A DNA stretch of 64,000 nucleotides from Asterias rubens (lineage: Eukaryota), in contig NC_047066.1 of assembly GCF_902459465.1 (NCBI RefSeq), positions 9,796,001 to 9,860,000 on the forward strand, read 5' to 3'. Within the stretch, counting starts at the first letter, position 1. Each line of letters begins with the position of its first letter. This document shows positions 13,678 to 53,367 of the stretch, piece by piece. Both the position numbers and the translations under genes were made by a program. The notes under the pieces were generated by a model, which was given only the letters and a program-made list of their open reading frames with translations, had not been told where the DNA came from and did not search any database.

Positions 13678-16600
13678 ATGCCCCTCAAGAAAGACGAAGA
13701 GACAGAGCCATTGTTGGAGCCTCTGTCTCAAACCTATGACCCCAACGTGGTGTCAGCTCGATCGGTAATCCCGCATGAGATAGCTACTTCCACACAGCCG
13801 GGTACCAGCGACCAGCAGCCAATAGAAGCACCCGGGGCAAGAGCGTACGCCGCTACCATTATCCTCTTCTTGGTCAACCTTCTCAATTATGTGGATCGAT
13901 TTACAATCGCTGGTTAGTCCTCAGAAAGTTTTTAACTTCCATTCTGCAGTTCACAAAATTAAATATCTTTGATATAAGGACTTCTGAACTGGTGGCTACA
14001 ACTACAGCTACGGCTGTTGCTAAGGGGGTTGCTTAGGGTTTGCCATACTTCATTAAAGGAACACGTTGCCTTGGATTGGTCGAGTTGGTCTGTAAAAAGC
14101 GTTTGTAACCGTTTGTTATAAAATGCATGGTTAGAAAGATGTTGTAAAAGTAGAATACAATGATTCACACAAACATGCCTCGAAATTGCATTATATAATA
14201 ACAATGCATTTACCACTTTTATGGTCCAGTAATCCATCCTTTCATACTGAACATCCTTTGTCCTCACCACTTTACTCTTATTGGTTCATACATGCATGAC
14301 ATGTAGCCACGAATTGTTTCTGAAATAGAAACTTTGATTGGCTGTAATTTTCCCGCTTCTTTCTGGATCCTTCTCTTAATCCCTTTCCCCTCTCTTTTTC
14401 TATAAATGGATGTATGTATTTGTTTGTACTTGTTTATGCCTTTGGAGAAAGTCCGGTTTGGATCGAAAGCTAAGGCCATCTACCCTACTCATTATTTTAC
14501 TCAATAGTATAAAGCCTATTTACAATAGTAAAGCCATTTTGTGTCGTCGTTAAGCTCTGAATAAGTTCAGGAGACCTCAGTTTCTAGACCCGTTTACATT
14601 GCTAGAGGCATCCTTGGTGTTTCATCTGTTCATTCAATCATAATATTTAACAAATAATAGTATAATATTCCCCATTGTTTCATCTGCAGCGAATCTCCAA
14701 GATATACAAAAGACCTACAACATAGCGGACAATAACAGTGCGGCTGGACTAGTACAGACGATTTTCATCGTTGGCTACATGGTGACATCACCAGTATTTG
14801 GTTACCTTGGCGACCGTTACCCCCGCAAAATCATCATGTCAGCGGGGATACTGTTTTGGGCGGCCATGACACTGAGTGGTTCGTTCATTCCAGCCGATGT
14901 GAGTTATCTGATATAGCTTACAATAATAATAGTAATAATAAAGTGGTTTCCTTCGTAGTGCACGTATCAGTCACTCAGTCATTCAGTATTTCCTGCCAGG
15001 TATTGTGAAGCTATGTTTTAGAAGTACAAGACCAATTCCTTCACATAGCACCTTGTAATGGTGCTGTGGTGCAATATACAGCCAATCGAACCAGGCACAC
15101 CGGGGCGAACCCCTATTCTAGGTTCTTTTACATGTATGTGCATAACACAACCTTGACAACACACAGGAGAAACAGTTTTACATTCCAACAGAAGGACGCA
15201 GCAATTATTGTTTAGGGACACAAGGTTCTCGACTGGGACTCGAACCCACACTCTGCTGAACAGAAACACCTGAGGTTGAGACCAGTGCTCTTATCCACTC
15301 GACCACGATCACGCCAGGTTGTAGTTCGTGTTCCATTCCTTTATTCAAAAATCCTTTATTCAAACGTGTGTCTTTGTTTTTATTCCCACAGCAATTTGGA
15401 TTTTTTGTAGCGATACGCGGCCTAGTAGGAGTAGGGGAGGCAAGTTACTCGACCATTGCCTGCACCCTCATCGGCGATCTGTTCATCGGTAACCGACGCA
15501 CTCAAATGTTGATGTTATTCTATTTTGCTATCCCTGTTGGAAGGTGAGTTTTCTTGTATTCATGAATTCAAGTTGCGCAGTATTCAGGTATTCATGTTGC
15601 GCAGTATTCATGAATTCATGTTGCCTAGTATTCAAGTATTCATGTTGCATTAAGTCATAGTTCTCATAGTTTTGTTTCGTATATTAGAAATGCTTGATTG
15701 ACTGTAATCGATGTTTCTTGGGGCAGCCATCTCATGCCTCACTATGCCACAACAGCGGGATTTTGAGGTGCACATCTCATGCCTCACTTTGCCTCATGCC
15801 TCAGTTGTTGCAAGGCATGAGGCAAAGGACTCATGCCTCATGCTCATGCCGTTCTCAGGCCTACCTATGCTAGCAATACTGAGCATGTGTGCGCACATGC
15901 CCAGAGCCCCATAAAAGGACCGTGATGTCTGCTGCCGCCAGCATTTCAAAAGTCTCCCATTCCTACAGTGGCAATATGTGGCACTGATTTATTACACATA
16001 CAGACGCAATGACAGCACAGTGTGGTGTGAGTTACTTCACCAATGTTTGTGTGCATAACATTTTACAGGATCTTTTGAGACATATAGGAGTATGCACCTA
16101 TTGACCCCTTGCACCAGAAACAAAGCTGTGCTTCAGCCAAACTTTGATTCATAGCATGGCAGGGCCTGTCGAGCTAAGTGTCTCTGCCGCACCAATTGAA
16201 CAAGAATTAAATTATTTGAATTTGAAAAGGGCCTGAGAGTCTTCATTATGTGTTTGTGTGATTTTGTTTTCAGTGGCCTTGGTTATATTGCTGGAAAAGG
16301 AGTAGCAGACGCATTTAATGATTGGAGATGGGCTCTTAGGGTGAGTATACATTAGTCAATAGACAAGTGGTATTTGACATGTTTGAAGCTTTGCATGTTG
16401 TGGAAAATAAAATAAGAGTTTACCATAAATAGTAAACTTGCGGATACAAACATGTGTCAATCTCATTTGGGATTTGTATTTGAAAAGTACCAGTGTGGTC
16501 TCATTGTTTTGAACAGTATAGGCCTACTATGGTCTTCATCAGTATGTTCAAAAGAAAATGAGCAGAGTACATGTGCATGTATACTGACCGAAACGTTAGA

Positions 16601-43785: not shown

Positions 43786-43913
43786 CAAGTTCTTGGGGTC
43801 CAAGTCCTTGGGGGTCCAAGTCCTTGGGGTCCAAGTCCTTGGGGTCCAAGTCCTTGGGGTCCAAGTTCTTGGGGTCCAAGTCCTTGGGGTCCAAGTCCTT
43901 GGGGTCAAAGTCC
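43786..43913. repeat. 15-bp minisatellite (CAAGTCCTTGGGGTC) x8 plus a partial unit, probably inside a small hAT-like MITE (~43774-43963)
   Basis: Direct reading of the units; TAGTGTTGT...ACAACACC ends; flanks GTTAAGAC/GATAAGAC. Confidence 0.9.
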
Positions 43914-44488: not shown

Positions 44489-44618
44489 TAGCCCACCTTG
44501 TTGAGCTATTAATGGCTCCGCTTTTAACATCGGTCTCATCACTGTCGCCATTGTAATGGCGACAGTGATGAGACCGATGTTAAAAGCGGAGCCATTAACA
44601 GCTCAACAAGGTGGGCTA
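44489..44618. mobile_element. 130-bp foldback element (64-bp arms, 1 mismatch) with 10-bp TSD; Mutator-like
   Basis: Arms 44489-44552 and 44555-44618; ATTGTGGTTC at 44479-44488 and 44619-44628. Confidence 0.88.
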
Positions 44619-45619
44619 ATTGTGGTTCGTGTTGTAAGAAAAGTTGGTGGAAAATGATAGCGCCCGCTTATGGGAAAATTGTGACAAATCAAAACGAGAT
44701 ATTGCACCAAAACTAAGTGGAGGCATCCAAGAACCTCTGGACCAAAGGTTGGAAACCAAGTCGGTTATGTAGCTTATTTAAGAAATTTAGTAAGGAAAAT
44801 CTATCAATTTCCTTCGCATCTCTGGTAACTGCCTTGATTGCCCCTTGATTCTTCCCCGTAAAAATGTAGATTTCCCTCATAATAGTACTACATTGCACTT
44901 ATAAAAGTTGGAAGGGCCTTTTAGCAATGAGATACAAGAACGTACAAGCCCGTACAAGAACCAAGTATTGGACCCAACTATCTCTCAATAATGGGATAGC
45001 ATCAATCGTTCAATATATTTTCGGATAAGTCACTTTAAAAAGAAAAAACAAAAAAGCAGTGAGACTTGAATTAAAGAACAAGAGTACATGTTATTAACAA
45101 TAAAAATTACCGCATTGAACTAAAAACAATATTGGAATTAAAGTAAATTGTCAGTTACACCATGAAGTTGAAAAATCACAAGACATACATCACCAAACAG
45201 AAAGAGACATGCTAGTCAATGCATTATACACGTACCCCACTGCAATCTAAAAATTGTAATAAAGTAGGTCTAAGAGAACATATCCCACATACATGTACAC
45301 CAAAATCTTGTGTGCACTTTTGAATAATAGAAAAGATTTTCTGGTGATATTTATTTACTTTTTTAGATACAGCGTCTCCTAAATAGATGGATAAAATACA
45401 AACACAGTTCTTTAAACAAAACAAAACGGAAGTTTTTTCTCACAGCCCCAAATATTCAAATTAGTCCCATTTAAGAAAAAGTGTACAAGTAGCCCATTAA
45501 GAAATGAATTTCAAGCACCCACCCCCACCCCCCACCCCCAAAAAAGAGAACACATTTTTAAATAGTGATATAATAATAAAAATAATGGTAACAAATAAAA
45601 AATAATTCAAACATAATTC

Positions 45620-45968
45620 AAACAATGCACAACAAACATTTATTTCAATCATACCATCAAATCCATCCACGATTCGTCCAAAACGCTTTTTGATCCTAAT
45701 CCATTGATCCAAATCCTTTGATCCAAATCCGGAATCCTGTGTTCCTGATCCAAATCCTGATCCAAATCCATGATCCTTTCATCCTGATCCGAAAATCCCT
45801 CCGTAGGATCCCTCATCCTAAATTTGGGTGCTCCATTTTTTTTTCTGAGCCATCTTTTCCTGATCCCGTCATGACAACAAAAATCCTTAAGAATCCGTTT
45901 CGTGGACTCCTTGAATTCCAACGATAATCCTAAGAAATCCCAATTTGTGAATGTCCATCCTTACGACA
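45620..45968 (-). other. SRSF1: Putative non-coding terminal exon of SRSF1/9 carrying a GGAU array (3' boundary approximate)
   Basis: Polypyrimidine acceptor TTTTTTTCAATATTCTCAG| at 45969/45968; 25 GGAT in 45661-45960; AATAAA at 45644-45639. Confidence 0.65.
45639..45644 (-). terminator. Polyadenylation signal AATAAA for SRSF1/9
   Basis: AATAAA on the minus strand followed by GT-rich sequence. Confidence 0.55.
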
Positions 45969-47624
45969 CTGAGAATATTGAAAAAAATACAAGATGTTAG
46001 ATACACTAAATATCTTAACTGGAGATCAATTGTTTGTCAGAATATTTACAATAAAAACACACCATATCTAAAAGTGCATGCAGCTTATGATGATTATTAC
46101 CAAATCCTCATAGCAGATTTTTGACATTTTCTCATGGACATATCATCATAATCAGAGTCGAACACTTTGAGTGAGTTCCCATATGGAGTTTTGTTTTTGT
46201 TTACAGCGAGAAATGACCCCCTTGGTAAACAACCCTTGGGGTCGATTTCACAGTGAGTTAGGCCTGACTTGGGACTAGTCCTAGGAGATATTAAAAACTT
46301 AAGGCTAGTTTTAACTCTTTGTGAAATCCCCCAAAGCTGGTTAAGGCACTGTTTATGCAATCAACGTGTGGTCATTAGATACATGTGCAGATATTTACTA
46401 AACAAAATCAATGGGATTTGCTGATTTTCCTGCCCAATACGGTTAAGAGATTCTTCAGGTGGTTAATGCAAAACATAATTGAAATGGAATTGTTTAATAT
46501 TTCTTGTTTCAATACTCGTGCACATAAGAAAGTCCTTTACCTGCAGTTTTATTATTGTGTTCCTAAATTACCACTCTAAACCACTTCATCAAAAGCAGCC
46601 CATGCATTTTTACAGCTGTTATTAAAATTATCAGATTATCAACATTTTTACTAAACACACAGGGAAGTTATCAATTCTGTATTCTTTTTGACAATTTCCA
46701 ACACCAACCAATAAAAAAACAAAAATCAACTCAAGCTTACAAAATATTATGGTAAAATATCAGCTAGAAAATATGCCAAAAACCACACATGTTTAAAACG
46801 CAATGTAAACCAGTTTTCTCAAGTTTACAACCCAACCTGGAACCAGGAGCAGTGAATCTTTTTAAGCCAAACCAATTTGAGATAAATGACTGGTCCCTCT
46901 TTGACATGATGAGAATAACTATTCATAAACTAAAAATGTCTACAAGATACTTCTCAAAACAGATGGTGCGTGATTATTGTCTAGTGAGTTAGCTTCTACA
47001 TGTTGGCACATTTAACAAACCATTTTTATAAGAATATTGAAGGAATATTTTAAAAACGTTTTCAGCAACCATATTAATTTATTCTTACTTATGCATTGTA
47101 CAAAAAACTTTGTGAAAAAAAACAATAAGTGATGACCATGGGGTGTAACAAATCAAAGAAATATCAAATAAAATGAAAAAAGGCATATCTTGAAAAGTCA
47201 AGTCAAACACTACAGCATAATAAAATGGCAACTACTTGAGGGGCAACTGTAAGTCTTTTATGGAAAGTTTGCGCAAATGTTTACGTACACAGTTCTGCTG
47301 ATTTCTTCAACAACGTAATATATTTTCTAAGTAAGAGAAAATTGTGCACAATAGCCAGGGTACAGCAGACAATTGGATGCCTTGTATTTTTCAGACTTCA
47401 TCTATAAGCATTATTGTAAGCACTCATACTCTAAACTTCTAGGTTAATGTTCTACATGTGGTAAAGTTCTTGGTTTTCTTCAAAAAACTTATTTTGTCAA
47501 ACCAACCTTGGTTTCCCAGTTGTTTCGCAAATTGCGAAGGAAAGAGTGAAGATAAGTCTTCCACTCCATTATAAGCTAAATCTATGCTCAGCCTGACATT
47601 CCCGGCCCACAGTCGTCCCTCACT

Positions 47625-50600
47625 TTAGCGAGAGTGTGAGCGACTGTGGGAGTGCCCTTTGGAGCGACTGGGACTGCGAGATCGGGACCTAGAGTATGAA
47701 CGCTTGTAGTGACGCTTTGGACTGTGGGAGCGTCGAGGACTTCGCTTCGGGCTGTAGTGTCGCTTGCTGATGGGAGAGCGACTTCGGGAACGACTGGAGC
47801 GGCTGTAGTCGGCCTTAACACGGATGTACGATTGATCACCCTGGAGTAAAAACAACACATTCGACAATCAGTGTTGGAGCCACGGTGGGCGGTGCTGGGC
47901 GGGCCTGCCCAGGACTCACAATTTTTGCCCAGCACTCTGAGAAAAATACATTATGCTGCCCAGCACAGATTTCAAATATTGTCAATTTTGCATTGATCTG
48001 AGACAGAGCTAATGATGAGGAGTGAGAAAGAACACAATCCAAAGGCCATTCAACTTATTGCATGGCCCCATATCACAAACAGTTTGGGAACCTGGCCCCA
48101 CTTCAGCAATAATGGCTCCATAATTTTTTTTATTCTTACATGTAATTATTAATTACATGTAAGAATACTTTTTTTGATCCCCTTGCCCTTCTAACAAATC
48201 TTGATTTATTGCCAACCACTAAAATTGGTCTAGCTACAACCCTGTCGACAATAGTTATAGAAAAGTCTTTTCAGACTACTAATTTACTATTAAAATCTAC
48301 CTACATGTACATGATGTTGATAAGGACTGCACTGGGATCAGTGTCAGGCATACCATAGATCATTATCAGAATCCAACAGTTTGGTTGCTGAAGAACCAGT
48401 AAACCACCAAGGGAGGTAGGACTTTTTGTACTCGGTTGAGTACCAGTAAAAAAAAATTTAGATGACTTTCCCAACAACAGAAACTCAGCAAAATTGTGGG
48501 CTGACATTTAGTCAAACAACCCACTTGATGCCATGAAGTTGATTTGAATATGCACTGCCGCTACTACTAGTAAATGGCCCAATTTCAAAGAGCTGTTTAA
48601 GCAGATTACAAATATAGCTAATAAATATAGCTAATTATCAAAAACGAGCAGGATACCACACACAGATGTGACATGGTGTTTTTACTGGTAAGGATACAAT
48701 CTTTTAAGCAAAATCACGCTATTCTTAGCTACTTTTTGAGCTGAAGCAGCTCTTTGAAACTGCGCCCAAACTGCGTGGAATCTAGGGCCGAGTGTTACAA
48801 TATTGGCCTTGATGACCTCCGTCCAAACAAAAAGTGGCTGAAATATATTACCTCATGAGAGCGAAACTTTGAATCATCTAAGGTCTTGACGGCATAGCGC
48901 ATGTCTTCCTCACTCACGTACTCTACTACACCGGTGCAATCTCGATGAACGTCGGCGTAGCAAACATCACCAGCTTCACGCATGTGGTCTTTCAGGTCCT
49001 GCCAGCTACCGGTGGAGGGGAGTCCTGGGCGAGGCAAATTTTTATCATGCAATCATTGAAGACATTTATGTATGTTATATGGAAAGGTTTGTGGTAACAC
49101 CATGTATTGACTATCTCTAAATGAATTGGGGTGGTTCTGAAAAGAACTGTCGGTTTCAACTCAACGTTTCGATCCGTATGCTCTAATTGCTCTAGTTTCA
49201 AATCCTACATTTATGTTAGTTTGATTTTGAAACTTTGAGGGTGAGAAAAACAATGTTGTATAAGGATGTTGAATGGCAGCATATACAGTGCTCCCCAATG
49301 GGTTGAAAATCCACAAGACCACAGAGCATATACATCAGATTTTTTGCTGGACCTGTAAATGATGTAGAATGGCAGCATACAGCGCTCGAATTTGGATTGA
49401 AAATCCATGAGACCACACGGAACTTGCAGCTCAGAATTTTTACTAGACCAGAATTTTGTCCTGGTCTTTAAAGTCATTTGTACATTGTATTGTGAAGCTG
49501 AAAGAATCATAACAAAAGTCTAGGATTCAAATTTCCAAGCATATTCAAACAGAAATCGAGCGTTGAAACGTATGAACTGCAAACGTGTGTCATCATAAGT
49601 GTTATCCAGAGTGAGAGGGGTGTCTGAGTGTTTTTTGGACACCCTGTTTTTAATCAGTGTAACAGACATTTTTAAATTGAATGCAAATTTTGACACCCTT
49701 CTACCAAATCCTGGCTAAAACCTCAGTCATCACAATGTATTTCAACAATTCAAGATTCTTGGCTGTGCTGAAAAAAGAAAAAAAAAAGGAATGACAAAAC
49801 ATCACTATTAGGAAAGTAATGATTGAACAGCTTTCCTTATACCTTACCTGACACGACACACCTGAAATGGGACCTCCTAGGTGGAGGACCGCCTCTCCTT
49901 CCACCTCCGCCTCCACCCCCACCTCCTCCTCCACCACCACCGCCCCCACTGTACCCGCCGCCGCCGCCCCTGGAGCCAGTATTACGAGGGCACTCGACAC
50001 GGAGTTGATAACCATCATAATCATAACCATTTCTGTAGTAAATAGCATCTTCTGCATCCCTGTTGAAAAATATATGTTTTTGTTATAAAGAAAAGACTCT
50101 ATAGAGAAAGACTCAGCTAGGGTCGAAACGTCAGGCCATTAACTATTTTTTGCAAAGAAAAGAGGGCTTAGACTAAATTAACGATAAGTTACAGAGCTGC
50201 GGCGATAACCATTAGCACACCTTGATTGATGAGCTGTAAATGGCTCTCTTTACAGCTCAACAAGGTGGGATACGATAACCGTATGCATATATAGCCAGTA
50301 GCCCTCGATCATTTCCCGCGCTGCGATGCTGATGGGCCAAATTTGGCTTATGTTGGTGTACATCAGATATTCTACATAAATTTTAAATAAAGCACTGTTC
50401 ATCATCATTACTTCTAGATTACTAGAAACTATGAGCCTTGGTACATCATCATTCATCGTACTGTGTAAAAATAACCACTGAATCAAAGGTAACGTCATCT
50501 GCATGAACCATCATAGAATGTAGTAACACTAGTCTGAAATGTTATTTGTTAGGTAACTATACTTTTTAATATAGGCCTACTTCACATTCACAATATTATT

Positions 50601-51065
50601 GAGTCGTTAAGTAAGCTTACCGTTGAAAATACAAAATTCACAGCATACAAAACAAACAAAAATCACAGCCAGAGAGGCAGTGTATTTGCCAATTTACTTT
50701 TCCATGATTTTACTTCTTCTTCTTTTTTATTATTAAGTAAGGAGTAAAAATAATGGTAAAAAAATGAATGGTTCAAAATAATAAAACTAAAGGCCAACCG
50801 ACCGAGTTTTAAAATAATAAAATACATAAAATGTATACCTTTTATCCTCGAACTCCACAAAGGCGAAAGGTGGTCCAACAGACTTGTTTTTCAAGTCAAT
50901 TTTGTTGATTCTACCATACTTGAAGAAGATGTCTTCGATGTCTTTGTCACGGATATCAGGAGGTAGATTACCGACGTAGATTCGGCCGTCTGTGGGACAA
51001 CCACTGTCACGGCCGCGCGATGAGCCTCCGCCACCACCACCACCACCTCGGCCGTAGTACGCCAT
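47625..51065 (-). CDS. SRSF1: SR splicing factor SF2/ASF, single co-ortholog of SRSF1/SRSF9. Exons: complement(50839..51065, 49848..50059, 48852..49024, 47625..47840)
   Basis: RRM1 ([17 protein letters not shown]), Gly linker, pseudo-RRM [27 protein letters not shown]|[10 protein letters not shown] domain. Confidence 0.95.
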
Positions 51066-52226
51066 CGTTTTTACAACAAAAACAGAGCCTCGGAAAAGTG
51101 ATCTGAACTCAAATGTTTCCCTTTAACCGGTCACGAAACGAGTTGGTTCAAGTTCAGGGAAAGGAAAAGGGGGAAAACGGGAGATATTCACTGTTAAAAA
51201 TAGCAATGTTTTGTCAAAAATGAATTCACACACGAGGTTCGCAAGTAAGGAAATTGTTGTGCTCTATGATGCGATGCTTGAGTTCTCTGTGCACATGCGC
51301 AATTCACGGTACGGGACGGGCATGCGCACACATCGCGTCCCCCTAAACAAAATAATGGAGCACAAAACAGGCACAATCAATCGGTCATCCGATGCTTGAA
51401 AGCGTCACAAATCTATCCGTAGCGCGCACGTTAATGAGGTTAAAGATCAAATCCTGAATTTTCTCTGCAAAGCATTCATCGGTATTCCTGCGTGACCTCG
51501 GTATGAATGTTTAATTAGTCAAAAGAAATTAGTCAACAGAAATTTATGTAAAAGTACAAACTGCTTAGAGTTTTTGCTCGGTGTTGTGACGCATATGGGA
51601 AACTTAATATTATTTTCCTCTCATATAAATGCCCTCAATTACCCAACTTTTCAAGGTTACAATGCTTTATTTATTCGTTTGTATGAAGCATACAATCATG
51701 GGAAGTAATTTAATTGAAAGTTTGCAGAACATATTAAAATTCTGTACGTGTTGCGGCTTGTTTTTTCGTGTACCTATAGTGTGCACTACCTTGGGGGGGG
51801 GGGGGCTATTGCACTCGGTATGTTGGATACGTCACGAGCTTTAACAACACCACGCATGTCATGTGGCGTTTGTTACGAGCTGCTGTAGCACATCCTCTTT
51901 AGAGCGAATAGGAACAGAACGTTTTGATATATCTACCAATCACCGTCCAGCATACCTGCATAATTTGTTACAAGCTACCGAGAGCAAGCTACCGAAATGA
52001 CCAATCAGAAATGTAGAAACAGGTTACCGCGGAGCCTGTTATCAAACAAGTGGATAAAGAAGGGGGGGTCAAGGGAGGGGCGCCCGGCAGAGCATATCCC
52101 ATGCAGGTAGTGTAAAAACACAATCAATTGAGAGATTTCACCATAAGAACAAATTCCAGAGACGAGAGAGAGACCAAGAGCTACTCCCAAAAAATCCGGA
52201 AAATTCACAAATTTCAGGATAACTTG
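51066..52226. promoter_or_regulatory. SRSF/DYNLL divergent promoter region with two candidate non-coding DYNLL first exons (donors 51244/51245 and 52226/52227)
   Basis: GCAA|GTAAGG and CTTG|GTAAGT donors; CCAAT boxes near 51935 and 52000; acceptor CTGCAG| at 53078. Confidence 0.5.
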
Positions 52227-53097: not shown

Positions 53098-53367
53098 ATG
53101 TCTGAACGCAAAGCAGTAGTCAAGAATGCCGACATGGCCGAAGATATCCAGCAAGACGCCATTGAGTGCGCAACCCAAGCCATGGAGAAGTTCAACGTGG
53201 AAAAGGACATTGCCGCCTACATCAAGAAGGAGTTTGACCGGAAGTACAACCCCACCTGGCATTGCATCGTGGGTAGAAACTTTGGCAGCTACGTCACTCA
53301 CGAAACCAAGCACTTCATCTACTTTTACCTTGGCCAGGTTGCCGTGTTGTTGTTCAAGTCTGGATAG
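53098..53367 (+). CDS. DYNLL2: Dynein light chain LC8 (co-ortholog of DYNLL1/DYNLL2), uninterrupted CDS
   Basis: 89 aa, [46 protein letters not shown]. Confidence 0.97.

What the first reader, a model, noticed from the sequence alone, without database searches (positions are those of the whole stretch)
45661..45960. SRSF1/9 terminal non-coding exon is a dense array of its own binding motif (25 GGAU in 300 nt)
Seen (manual count): 25 GGAT and 33 GGA on the transcribed strand versus 3 GGA on the other strand. Spacers vary (GGATTT, GGATCA, GGATTC), so this is not a simple tandem repeat. It lies between a strong acceptor and AATAAA. Known: the SWQDLKD helix of the SRSF1/9 pseudo-RRM, encoded in this gene, recognises 5'-GGA-3', and SR genes autoregulate through unproductive splicing. 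Inference: a multivalent self-sensing platform, an independently built counterpart of the vertebrate SRSF1 3'-UTR control element.
Basis: partly seen in the sequence, partly recalled or inferred. Interest (0 to 1): 0.8.

Follow-up and report, generated by a model that had tools for sequence, protein, structure and literature searches.

The report
GGAU-packed 3'UTR exon of starfish SRSF1/9
A 314-nt non-coding exon-like segment 1.7 kb downstream of a starfish splicing-factor gene (SRSF1/9 type) is crammed with GGAU, the motif this protein family binds; similar arrays lie downstream of the same gene in molluscs, a tick, an acorn worm and a shark, so it looks like an ancient self-regulation device, not a starfish invention.

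Summary
The minus strand of 45661-45960 holds 25 GGAT and 33 GGA, against a window mean of 0.9 GGAT per 300 nt. Dinucleotide shuffles of the segment itself give 6.4 +/- 2 GGAT.

The segment lies on the strand of an SRSF1/9-type gene whose stop codon is at 47625-47627. It is bounded by a branch point, a pyrimidine tract and an AG (exon start 45968), and by a donor-like GATG|GTATGA (exon end 45655). Both boundaries, and a weak donor 118 nt after the stop, are conserved in five starfish gene copies. These include both Patiria paralogs, which have different neighbours, so the exon belongs to the SRSF gene. It is non-coding, unstructured and single-copy in the window.

The densest GGAU window of the whole locus falls within 3 kb after the stop, on the gene strand, in 11 of 14 SRSF1/9-type loci from six phyla. 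Oyster and tick RNA-seq contigs carry the array in the mRNA 3'UTR.

Best reading: an enhancer/sensor cluster for the known SRSF1-type 3'UTR-intron switch that leads to NMD. "Terminal exon" and "independently built" are not supported. No Asterias transcript could be found, and binding and NMD are inferred.

The parts
47625..47840 (-). Last coding exon (RS domain) of the SRSF1/9-type gene, with stop codon TAA at 47625-47627.
   Evidence: Six-frame motif search and open frames. The exon joins give 275 aa, the length of the gene called in the public record.
47618..47624 (-). Proximal donor candidate A|GTGAGG, 1 nt after the stop. A junction here would be too close to the stop to trigger NMD.
   Evidence: Read from sequence. 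It is absent at this position in Patiria. Oyster and shark splice 14 nt and 5 nt after their stop codons.
47499..47516 (-). Distal 3'UTR donor GGAAACCAAG|GTTGGTTT. The exon would end at 47507, 118 nt after the stop, a distance compatible with NMD.
   Evidence: Read from sequence. The same motif lies about 80-120 nt after the stop in Patiria L008, Patiria L011, Acanthaster L009 and Asterias L001.
45969..46200 (-). Intron end: branch point CTAAC (45996-46000), pyrimidine tract, AG (45969-45970), and a conserved upstream flank.
   Evidence: 46002-45898 aligns to Patiria L008 17065-17177. The acceptor is invariant in five starfish copies.
45655..45968 (-). GGA/GGAU-dense non-coding exon of 314 nt, with 33 GGA and 25 GGAT (about one GGA per 9.5 nt).
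45690..45790 (-). Degenerate tandem core with unit GGATTTGGATCA; this is the lineage-specific expansion of the array.
   Evidence: TRF. A 12-nt copy-number difference from the second Asterias genome. The core is absent from Patiria and Acanthaster.
45649..45654 (-). 5' splice-site-like GTATGA directly after the exon (GATG|GTATGA).
   Evidence: TGGTATG is invariant in five starfish copies. Ptychodera and the tick have CAGG|GTA at the end of their GGA-rich segments.
45639..45644 (-). AATAAA hexamer, a possible poly(A) signal.
   Evidence: It is present in both Asterias genomes. Acanthaster has ATTAAA at the same place and neither Patiria copy has a canonical hexamer.
45609..45638 (-). Conserved G/U-rich block downstream (TGTTTGA core; GCATGTTTGA in Patiria and Acanthaster). 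It could be an intronic enhancer or a downstream element of a poly(A) site.
   Evidence: 45684-45609 aligns to Patiria L008 17351-17430 and is in alignment A5.

Best explanation
The segment is a non-coding exon in the 3' untranslated part of the starfish SRSF1/9 gene. It forms the downstream side of a 3'UTR intron.

Proposed mechanism:
1. The exon is packed with UGGAUY sites for the tandem RRMs of the gene's own product. The pseudo-RRM helix SWQDLKD reads GGA and RRM1 reads a nearby C.
2. When the protein is abundant it coats this exon.
3. Like any SR protein bound to an exonic enhancer, it then promotes use of the upstream 3' splice site at 45969, paired with the weak conserved donor 118 nt after the stop.
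4. Removing the 1538-nt intron leaves an exon junction more than 55 nt downstream of the stop, so the mRNA is degraded by NMD.
5. When the protein is scarce the intron stays in, or the transcript ends earlier, and the mRNA is productive. The result is negative feedback.

This is the same circuit as the published vertebrate SRSF1 3'UTR-intron switch, and probably its ortholog.

Shown here: motif density; conserved splice-site-like boundaries; linkage of the exon to the gene through a duplication; conservation of the array's position and strand across phyla; presence of the array in mature 3'UTRs of oyster and tick.

Inferred: use of the exon in Asterias, binding by the protein, activation of splicing, and NMD.
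For: - Motif excess beyond composition.
- The gene encodes RRM1, an SWQDLKD pseudo-RRM and an RS domain.
- Apart from the coding exons and one block near the promoter, the two exon boundaries are the only blocks that align between Asterias and Patiria in the 18 kb compared.
- The acceptor CAATrTyCTCAG|TGyCGTAAGGA and the 3' end TGGTATG are invariant in five starfish copies.
- The distal donor is conserved.
- Both Patiria paralogs keep the exon although their neighbours differ.
- Between the two Asterias genomes the substitution rate in the exon plus flanks is 1.7%, against 3.9% in neighbouring non-coding DNA (Fisher p = 0.007), which is the level of the coding exons.
- The locus-wide GGAT maximum on either strand lies within 3 kb after the stop in 11 of 14 SRSF1/9-type loci.
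- The hexamers TGGATT, TTGGAT and GGATCA are shared by 7-9 of the 9 arrays analysed.
- The oyster RNA-seq contig L018 has a spliced 3'UTR that contains the array. Tick RNA-seq contigs contain their array too.
- The shark gene model splices from 5 nt after the stop into a GGA-rich exon that ends AATG|GTATGA.
- Literature: the vertebrate SRSF1 3'UTR intron is retained in the productive mRNA; SRSF1 promotes its removal, which leads to NMD; conserved elements overlap both junctions (PMC2953442, PMC9262138). GGA and CN recognition was tested with UCAUUGGAU and UGGAUUUUUCAU (PMC7813835). SRSF9 binds CUGGAUU (PMC6101530, citing Simard and Chabot 2002).
- The RNA shows no excess structure (z = -0.55), which suits a single-stranded binding platform.
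Against: - No Asterias transcript covering the exon or its junctions was found. Two exact-pattern scans of the metagenome collection returned nothing, and no RNA-seq contig of this species was reachable.
- In oyster and tick the array sits in what appear to be ordinary, abundant mRNAs. It may therefore be a constitutive 3'UTR element rather than one seen only in a decaying isoform.
- The distal donor GTTGGT is weak.
- AATAAA in Asterias allows a terminal exon, so the role of the conserved GTATG is unclear.
- The C in UGGAUCA is at +2 from GGA, not at the SELEX optimum of -4 or +6 (PMC7813835).
- SRSF9 bound to CUGGAUU is published as a repressor of a 3' splice site, so the sign of the effect could differ.
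- Zebrafish SRSF9 and two amphioxus genes have no array.
Confidence: 0.55

Rival explanations
1. The array is a constitutive 3'UTR element of the mature mRNA. It would act after splicing, on export, translation or stability, through binding of the shuttling SRSF1/9 protein or another factor, rather than as a splicing enhancer.
For: Oyster and tick RNA-seq contigs carry the array within long, apparently normal 3'UTRs. AATAAA with a G/U-rich block follows the Asterias exon. Translational and other post-splicing layers of SRSF1 autoregulation are reported (Sun et al. 2010, as summarised in PMC4529898).
Against: This does not explain the invariant acceptor with its branch point, or the invariant donor-like GTATG at the two ends of the array in starfish. 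It also does not explain the acceptor-like and donor-like sites around the arrays in Ptychodera, tick and shark, or the conserved NMD-competent donor.
Confidence: 0.2
2. The array is a landing pad for other GGA-reading or UGGAU-reading proteins, for example the pseudo-RRM SR proteins of the SRSF4/5/6 type. It would then mediate cross-regulation rather than self-regulation.
For: The SWQDLKD pseudo-RRM mode of GGA recognition is described as conserved (PMC7813835). The search returned many other RRM proteins, so specificity cannot be read from the sequence.
Against: The array tracks SRSF1/9-type genes across phyla and through a gene duplication. The flanking preference UGGAUU/C matches the sites published for SRSF1 and SRSF9.
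Confidence: 0.12
3. The array is a neutral, degenerate mini- or microsatellite that happens to lie in the gap between two convergent genes.
For: The core 45690-45790 is tandemly duplicated and differs in copy number between Asterias genomes. Another minisatellite lies 1.8 kb further on.
Against: Two thirds of the segment is unique sequence that aligns between starfish orders. It evolves more slowly than its flanks. A strand-specific array recurs at the same place in 11 of 14 loci from six phyla.
Confidence: 0.04
4. The segment is a protein-coding exon, based on the 102-103-codon open frame in A. rubens.
For: One frame is open across the whole segment in the window.
Against: The same frame has 3 stops in the second Asterias genome, because of an A9/A10 length difference. 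No frame is open in Patiria or Acanthaster, and exon lengths differ by non-multiples of 3. A TAA at exon positions 6-8 is invariant. There is no Pfam match.
Confidence: 0.01

Closest known systems
Vertebrate SRSF1 (SF2/ASF) 3'UTR-intron AS-NMD autoregulation (Lareau 2007; Sun 2010; Valacca 2010, PMC2953442; Ding 2022, PMC9262138)
   Same: The gene family is the same. There is an intron downstream of the stop codon, conserved sequence at both junctions, and a candidate donor far enough from the stop for NMD. A shark SRSF1B locus examined here shows the same layout, with GGA/GGAU-rich exons after the 3'UTR intron.
   Different: Nothing has been demonstrated in Asterias. The starfish gene sits in SRSF9-type synteny (DYNLL1 / GATC / TRIAP1). 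The array is far denser (25 GGAU in 300 nt) because of a local tandem expansion. The papers read here do not describe a GGAU array as the sensing element.
Tra2a / Tra2b poison exons (PMC3240583)
   Same: Each is a non-coding exon of about 300 nt, in the gene of a splicing activator, that holds many copies of that activator's own binding motif. Inclusion is activated by the protein, and the sites are conserved while the exon remains non-coding.
   Different: Those exons lie between coding exons and bring in a premature stop. Here the exon lies after the normal stop, so NMD would depend on the position of the junction. The motif there is GAA, not GGAU.
SRSF9/SRp30c CE9 element of hnRNP A1 pre-mRNA (Simard and Chabot 2002, cited in PMC6101530)
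   Same: The protein subfamily is the same, and the core motif CUGGAUU resembles the UGGAUU/UGGAUC units that dominate the array.
   Different: CE9 is intronic, has few copies, and represses the downstream 3' splice site. Here the motifs are exonic and number 25-33.

Membership tests
SRSF1-type 3'UTR-intron AS-NMD autoregulatory module | The host gene encodes an SRSF1/9-type protein (RRM1, SWQDLKD pseudo-RRM, RS domain). | tested here: met
   The product is 275 aa and its N-terminal ~100 residues (the only stretch aligned, where an exon join was 1 nt off) are 73% identical to the Patiria SRSF1-like protein.
SRSF1-type 3'UTR-intron AS-NMD autoregulatory module | An intron lies wholly downstream of the stop codon, with its 5' junction more than 50-55 nt after the stop. 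| tested here: inconclusive
   The sequence offers a conserved donor at +118 nt and a conserved acceptor 1538 nt further on. No Asterias transcript was available to show that they are used.
SRSF1-type 3'UTR-intron AS-NMD autoregulatory module | Conserved non-coding sequence overlaps both junctions. | tested here: met
   Within starfish. Between the two Asterias genomes.
SRSF1-type 3'UTR-intron AS-NMD autoregulatory module | The spliced isoform is degraded by NMD, and the gene's own protein shifts splicing towards it. | not testable with these tools
   This needs RNA-seq with NMD inhibition and dosage experiments.
Exonic splicing-enhancer cluster for the host protein | The protein's published binding motif is enriched, on one strand only, inside an exon next to a regulated splice site. 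| tested here: met
   Motif definitions come from PMC7813835 and PMC6101530.
Poison cassette exon (carrying a premature stop) | The exon is inserted between coding exons and introduces an in-frame stop. | tested here: not met
   The exon lies 1.66 kb downstream of the normal stop codon.
Mini- or microsatellite | Head-to-tail copies of one unit run across the whole feature. | tested here: not met
   Only 45690-45790 is tandem. The remainder is unique sequence and is orthologous across starfish.
Dispersed repeat / transposable element | Further copies exist elsewhere. | tested here: inconclusive
   There is no second copy in the 64-kb window, and the segment is found at the orthologous place in other species. 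The rest of the genome could not be searched.

The most novel reading that the evidence does not exclude
A strand-specific GGAU/GGA array in an exon after the stop codon is an ancestral bilaterian feature of SRSF1/9 genes. It would be the cis-element through which the protein measures its own concentration. On this reading it has been kept for over half a billion years by turnover of individual sites rather than by sequence conservation, retained in vertebrate SRSF1, lost from SRSF9 (only zebrafish was checked), and expanded by tandem duplication in Asterias.
Probability: 0.45. Interest if true: 0.7.

Novelty: new member of a known kind. Interest (0 to 1): 0.55.

Why it matters
SRSF1 is an essential splicing factor and a proto-oncogene. 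Its level is held constant by splicing within its own 3'UTR, but the papers read here do not name the sequence through which the protein senses itself. A motif array that recurs at the same place from oysters and ticks to starfish and sharks is a concrete candidate for that sensor. It also pushes the origin of the SRSF1-type circuit back to early bilaterians. Comparative work so far had covered the SRSF4/5/6 group (PMC4379411). The Asterias version, with about one site per 9.5 nt, is an unusually clean natural substrate for binding and minigene tests.

Tried and rejected
- Coding exon: rejected. The frame is broken in the sister genome and in the other starfish, and there is no Pfam hit.
- Structured RNA or a known RNA family: rejected. 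The folding z-score is -0.55, and there is no Rfam match in 45600-46000.
- Dispersed repeat: no other copy in the window.
- Part of the convergent GATC gene: rejected. The splice signals are on the SRSF strand, and the exon follows the SRSF paralog in a Patiria locus that has no GatC nearby.
- Asterias transcript evidence: not obtained. The exact DYNLL1 protein lookup returned a spliced A. rubens DYNLL1 mRNA from a JGI metatranscriptome (L007). Two exact-pattern scans for the SRSF 3'UTR and the exon start found nothing. The 275-aa Asterias protein never appeared among the search hits, so it could not be looked up by identity.
- The fish-scaffold profile served only to reach the Patiria ortholog.
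- The promoter/terminator scan is of bacterial type and irrelevant here.
- Sequence-level homology of the array between phyla could not be shown beyond short shared units such as TTGGATCAGGA. The claim rests on position, strand and motif content.

Full report
**1. Observation.** The minus strand of 45661-45960 carries 25 GGAT and 33 GGA. The plus strand carries 1 and 3. A 300-nt frame in this window holds on average 0.88 GGAT (sd 1.65), and no other frame on either strand exceeds 6. Dinucleotide-preserving shuffles of the segment itself give 6.4 +/- 2.0 GGAT, with a maximum of 13 in 2000 shuffles. The excess therefore belongs to the motif and not to base composition. TRF reports a degenerate tandem core at 45690-45790. 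The remainder is unique sequence.

**2. Gene context.** Six-frame searches place four genes in the region:
- TRIAP1 on the minus strand, near 38.8 kb.
- GATC on the plus strand, 41.1-42.0 kb.
- An SRSF1/9-type gene on the minus strand, with exons at 51065-50839, 50059-49848, 49024-48852 and 47840-47625. It has an SWQDLKD pseudo-RRM, and its stop is TAA at 47625-47627.
- DYNLL1 on the plus strand, 53098-53364.

The GGAU segment is on the SRSF strand, 1.66 kb after that stop. An exact-protein lookup with DYNLL1 shows that the window is identical to GCA_902459465.3 (L002). A second genome, GCA_032118995.1 (L001), is about 95% identical. From memory, and not from a tool, these are Asterias rubens and a congener.

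**3. Anatomy.**
- Upstream of the segment lie a consensus branch site CTAAC (45996-46000), a pyrimidine tract, and AG (45969-45970). The exon would start at 45968.
- At the other end is GATG|GTATGA, so the exon would end at 45655.
- This is followed at once by AATAAA (45639-45644) and a G/U-rich stretch.
- Between the stop and the segment there are two donor candidates. A|GTGAGG lies 1 nt after the stop. CCAAG|GTTGGT gives a junction 118 nt after the stop.

**4. What it is not.**
- It does not code for protein. The 102-103-codon open frame in the window is broken in L001 by an A9/A10 length difference. No frame is open in other starfish, exon lengths differ by non-multiples of three, a TAA near the exon start is invariant, and Pfam finds nothing.
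- It is not a structured RNA. Folding is no better than shuffles (z = -0.55), and no Rfam family matches.
- It is single-copy in the window.

**5. Conservation in starfish.** I reached the Patiria miniata ortholog P0236 through a representative search and a profile search and fetched its locus (L008).

Apart from the coding exons and one block near the promoter, only two blocks align between Asterias and Patiria over the 18 kb compared. These are the acceptor side (46002-45898) and the donor side (45684-45609) of the segment.

An alignment of five starfish copies (two Asterias, two Patiria paralogs, Acanthaster) shows the following:
- an invariant acceptor CAATrTyCTCAG|TGyCGTAAGGA;
- an alignable 5' half of the exon;
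- an invariant TGGTATG at the 3' end;
- a conserved TGTTTGA block about 35 nt further on.

The distal donor GGAAACyAAG|GTTGGTTT lies about 80-120 nt after the stop in all of them.

The two Patiria paralogs have different neighbours. One lies beside DYNLL1. The other lies between a GIDE-domain gene and GatC. Both keep the exon, so the exon belongs to the SRSF gene.

Between the two Asterias genomes the exon plus flanks differ at 1.7% of sites. Neighbouring non-coding DNA differs at 3.9% (p = 0.007), and coding exons differ at 0.5-2.4%. The tandem core exists only in Asterias and differs by one 12-nt unit between the two genomes.

AATAAA is not conserved. Acanthaster has ATTAAA at that place, and neither Patiria copy has a canonical hexamer. 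The conserved 3' feature is therefore the donor-like site, which argues against a simple terminal exon.

**6. Conservation of the array beyond starfish.** For each SRSF1/9-type locus that I could fetch, I asked where the densest 300-nt GGAT or GGA frame lies. It falls within 3 kb after the stop, on the gene strand, and exceeds every other frame on both strands in 11 of 14 loci:
- both Asterias genomes;
- both Patiria paralogs;
- Acanthaster;
- the crinoid Anneissia;
- the hemichordate Ptychodera;
- the shark Stegostoma, gene SRSF1B (by GGAT);
- the oyster Crassostrea;
- the abalone Haliotis;
- the tick Haemaphysalis.

The z-scores range from 5 to 26. It does not do so in zebrafish SRSF9 or in two amphioxus genes.

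The nine arrays analysed share these features:
- the hexamers TGGATT (9 of 9), TTGGAT (8 of 9) and GGATCA (7 of 9);
- a U/A before GGA and a U after it;
- a 4- to 12-fold excess of GGA over its complement;
- units such as TTGGATCAGGA, which recur in starfish, crinoid and acorn worm.

In Ptychodera, the tick, the abalone and the shark, the array begins at an acceptor-like site. In Ptychodera and the tick it ends at CAGG|GTA.

**7. Transcript evidence, outside Asterias.**
- The oyster Logan contig L018 is a spliced mRNA. Its CDS runs 40-738, a 102-nt intron is removed 14 nt after the stop, and the array (15 GGAT) lies in the following 3'UTR exon.
- The tick RNA-seq contigs L020-L022 carry their GGA-dense segment in an unspliced 3'UTR.
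- The shark gene model P0239 joins a donor 5 nt after the true stop to a GGA-rich 154-nt exon that ends AATG|GTATGA. A second acceptor is followed by a GGAU cluster.
- For Asterias itself nothing was found.

**8. What is known.** In mammals the SRSF1 3'UTR contains an intron that is retained in the productive mRNA. Its removal makes the normal stop premature and triggers NMD. Ultraconserved elements overlap both junctions (PMC2953442). SRSF1 protein drives that removal, and the 3'UTR alone responds to SRSF1 dose (PMC9262138). The pseudo-RRM reads GGA through SWQDLKD, RRM1 reads CN, and the binding RNAs tested were UCAUUGGAU and UGGAUUUUUCAU (PMC7813835). SRSF9 binds CUGGAUU (PMC6101530). Tra2 poison exons are about 300-nt non-coding exons packed with Tra2 sites (PMC3240583). 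The comparative study of SR-gene unproductive splicing covered SRSF4/5/6, not SRSF1/9 (PMC4379411). A search for work on echinoderms returned nothing.

**9. Reading.** The best-supported explanation is that this is the starfish version, probably the ortholog, of the SRSF1 3'UTR switch. The GGAU-packed exon would be an enhancer/sensor that recruits the gene's own product and so promotes removal of the 3'UTR intron and NMD. I put this at 0.55.

- The main rival is a post-splicing role of the same array in a constitutive 3'UTR (0.2). The oyster and tick mRNAs make this plausible.
- Cross-regulation by other GGA readers is at 0.12, and a neutral satellite at 0.04.
"Terminal" and "independently built" do not.

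**10. Limits.**
- There is no Asterias RNA evidence, and no binding or functional data.
- Between phyla, homology is inferred from position, strand and motif content, not from alignment.
- Only one vertebrate SRSF9 and one vertebrate SRSF1 were examined.
- Species names for two accessions are from memory.

Noticed in passing
window 43786-43913: A 15-nt minisatellite of 8.5 copies at 94% matches. On the SRSF strand it reads CCCAAGGACTTGGAC, so it is a second GGA-rich array (GGAC type) about 3.7 kb after the SRSF stop. This region aligns poorly with the second Asterias genome (60-76% identity). Patiria paralog L011 has a comparable GGATTCC tandem array at 14557-14900, and Acanthaster and the crinoid also have a second GGA-rich cluster.
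   Followed up: partly
window 44489-44618: A near-perfect 64-nt + 64-nt inverted repeat (98% complementary, 2-nt loop), nested in two weaker inverted repeats. It gives sub-threshold miRNA-like Rfam hits on both strands. The region does not align with the second Asterias genome, which suggests a MITE-like insertion polymorphism.
   Followed up: partly
L008 and L011 (Patiria miniata), L009 (Acanthaster): The SRSF1/9 gene is duplicated in Patiria. One copy keeps DYNLL1 as neighbour. The other lies between a GIDE/RING gene and GatC. The one Acanthaster copy that was fetched has the GIDE/GatC arrangement. Asterias, the crinoid, the acorn worm and the abalone keep the undivided order DYNLL1 - SRSF - GatC.
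   Followed up: partly
window 51957-52010 and 52110-52226: A 54-nt non-coding block between the divergent SRSF and DYNLL1 genes is 83% identical to Patiria, which may mark a shared promoter region. 52110-52226 is the DYNLL1 5'UTR exon, as shown by a spliced JGI metatranscriptome contig (L007) that is 100% identical to the window.
   Followed up: partly
window 47800-48300 and 50100-50800: Two stretches inside SRSF introns 3 and 1 have no counterpart in the second Asterias genome (0-30% identity in the pairwise alignment). They are probably lineage-specific insertions.
   Followed up: no
L003, L005, L006 (ENA metagenome assemblies): Marine metagenome contigs are 99.8-99.9% identical to this window around DYNLL1. 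This is starfish genomic DNA present in environmental assemblies.
   Followed up: no
window 45518-45540: A C-rich run (G-rich on the SRSF strand, GGGGGTGGGGGGTGGGGGTGGG) lies about 100 nt beyond the AATAAA. Its length differs between the two Asterias genomes.
   Followed up: no
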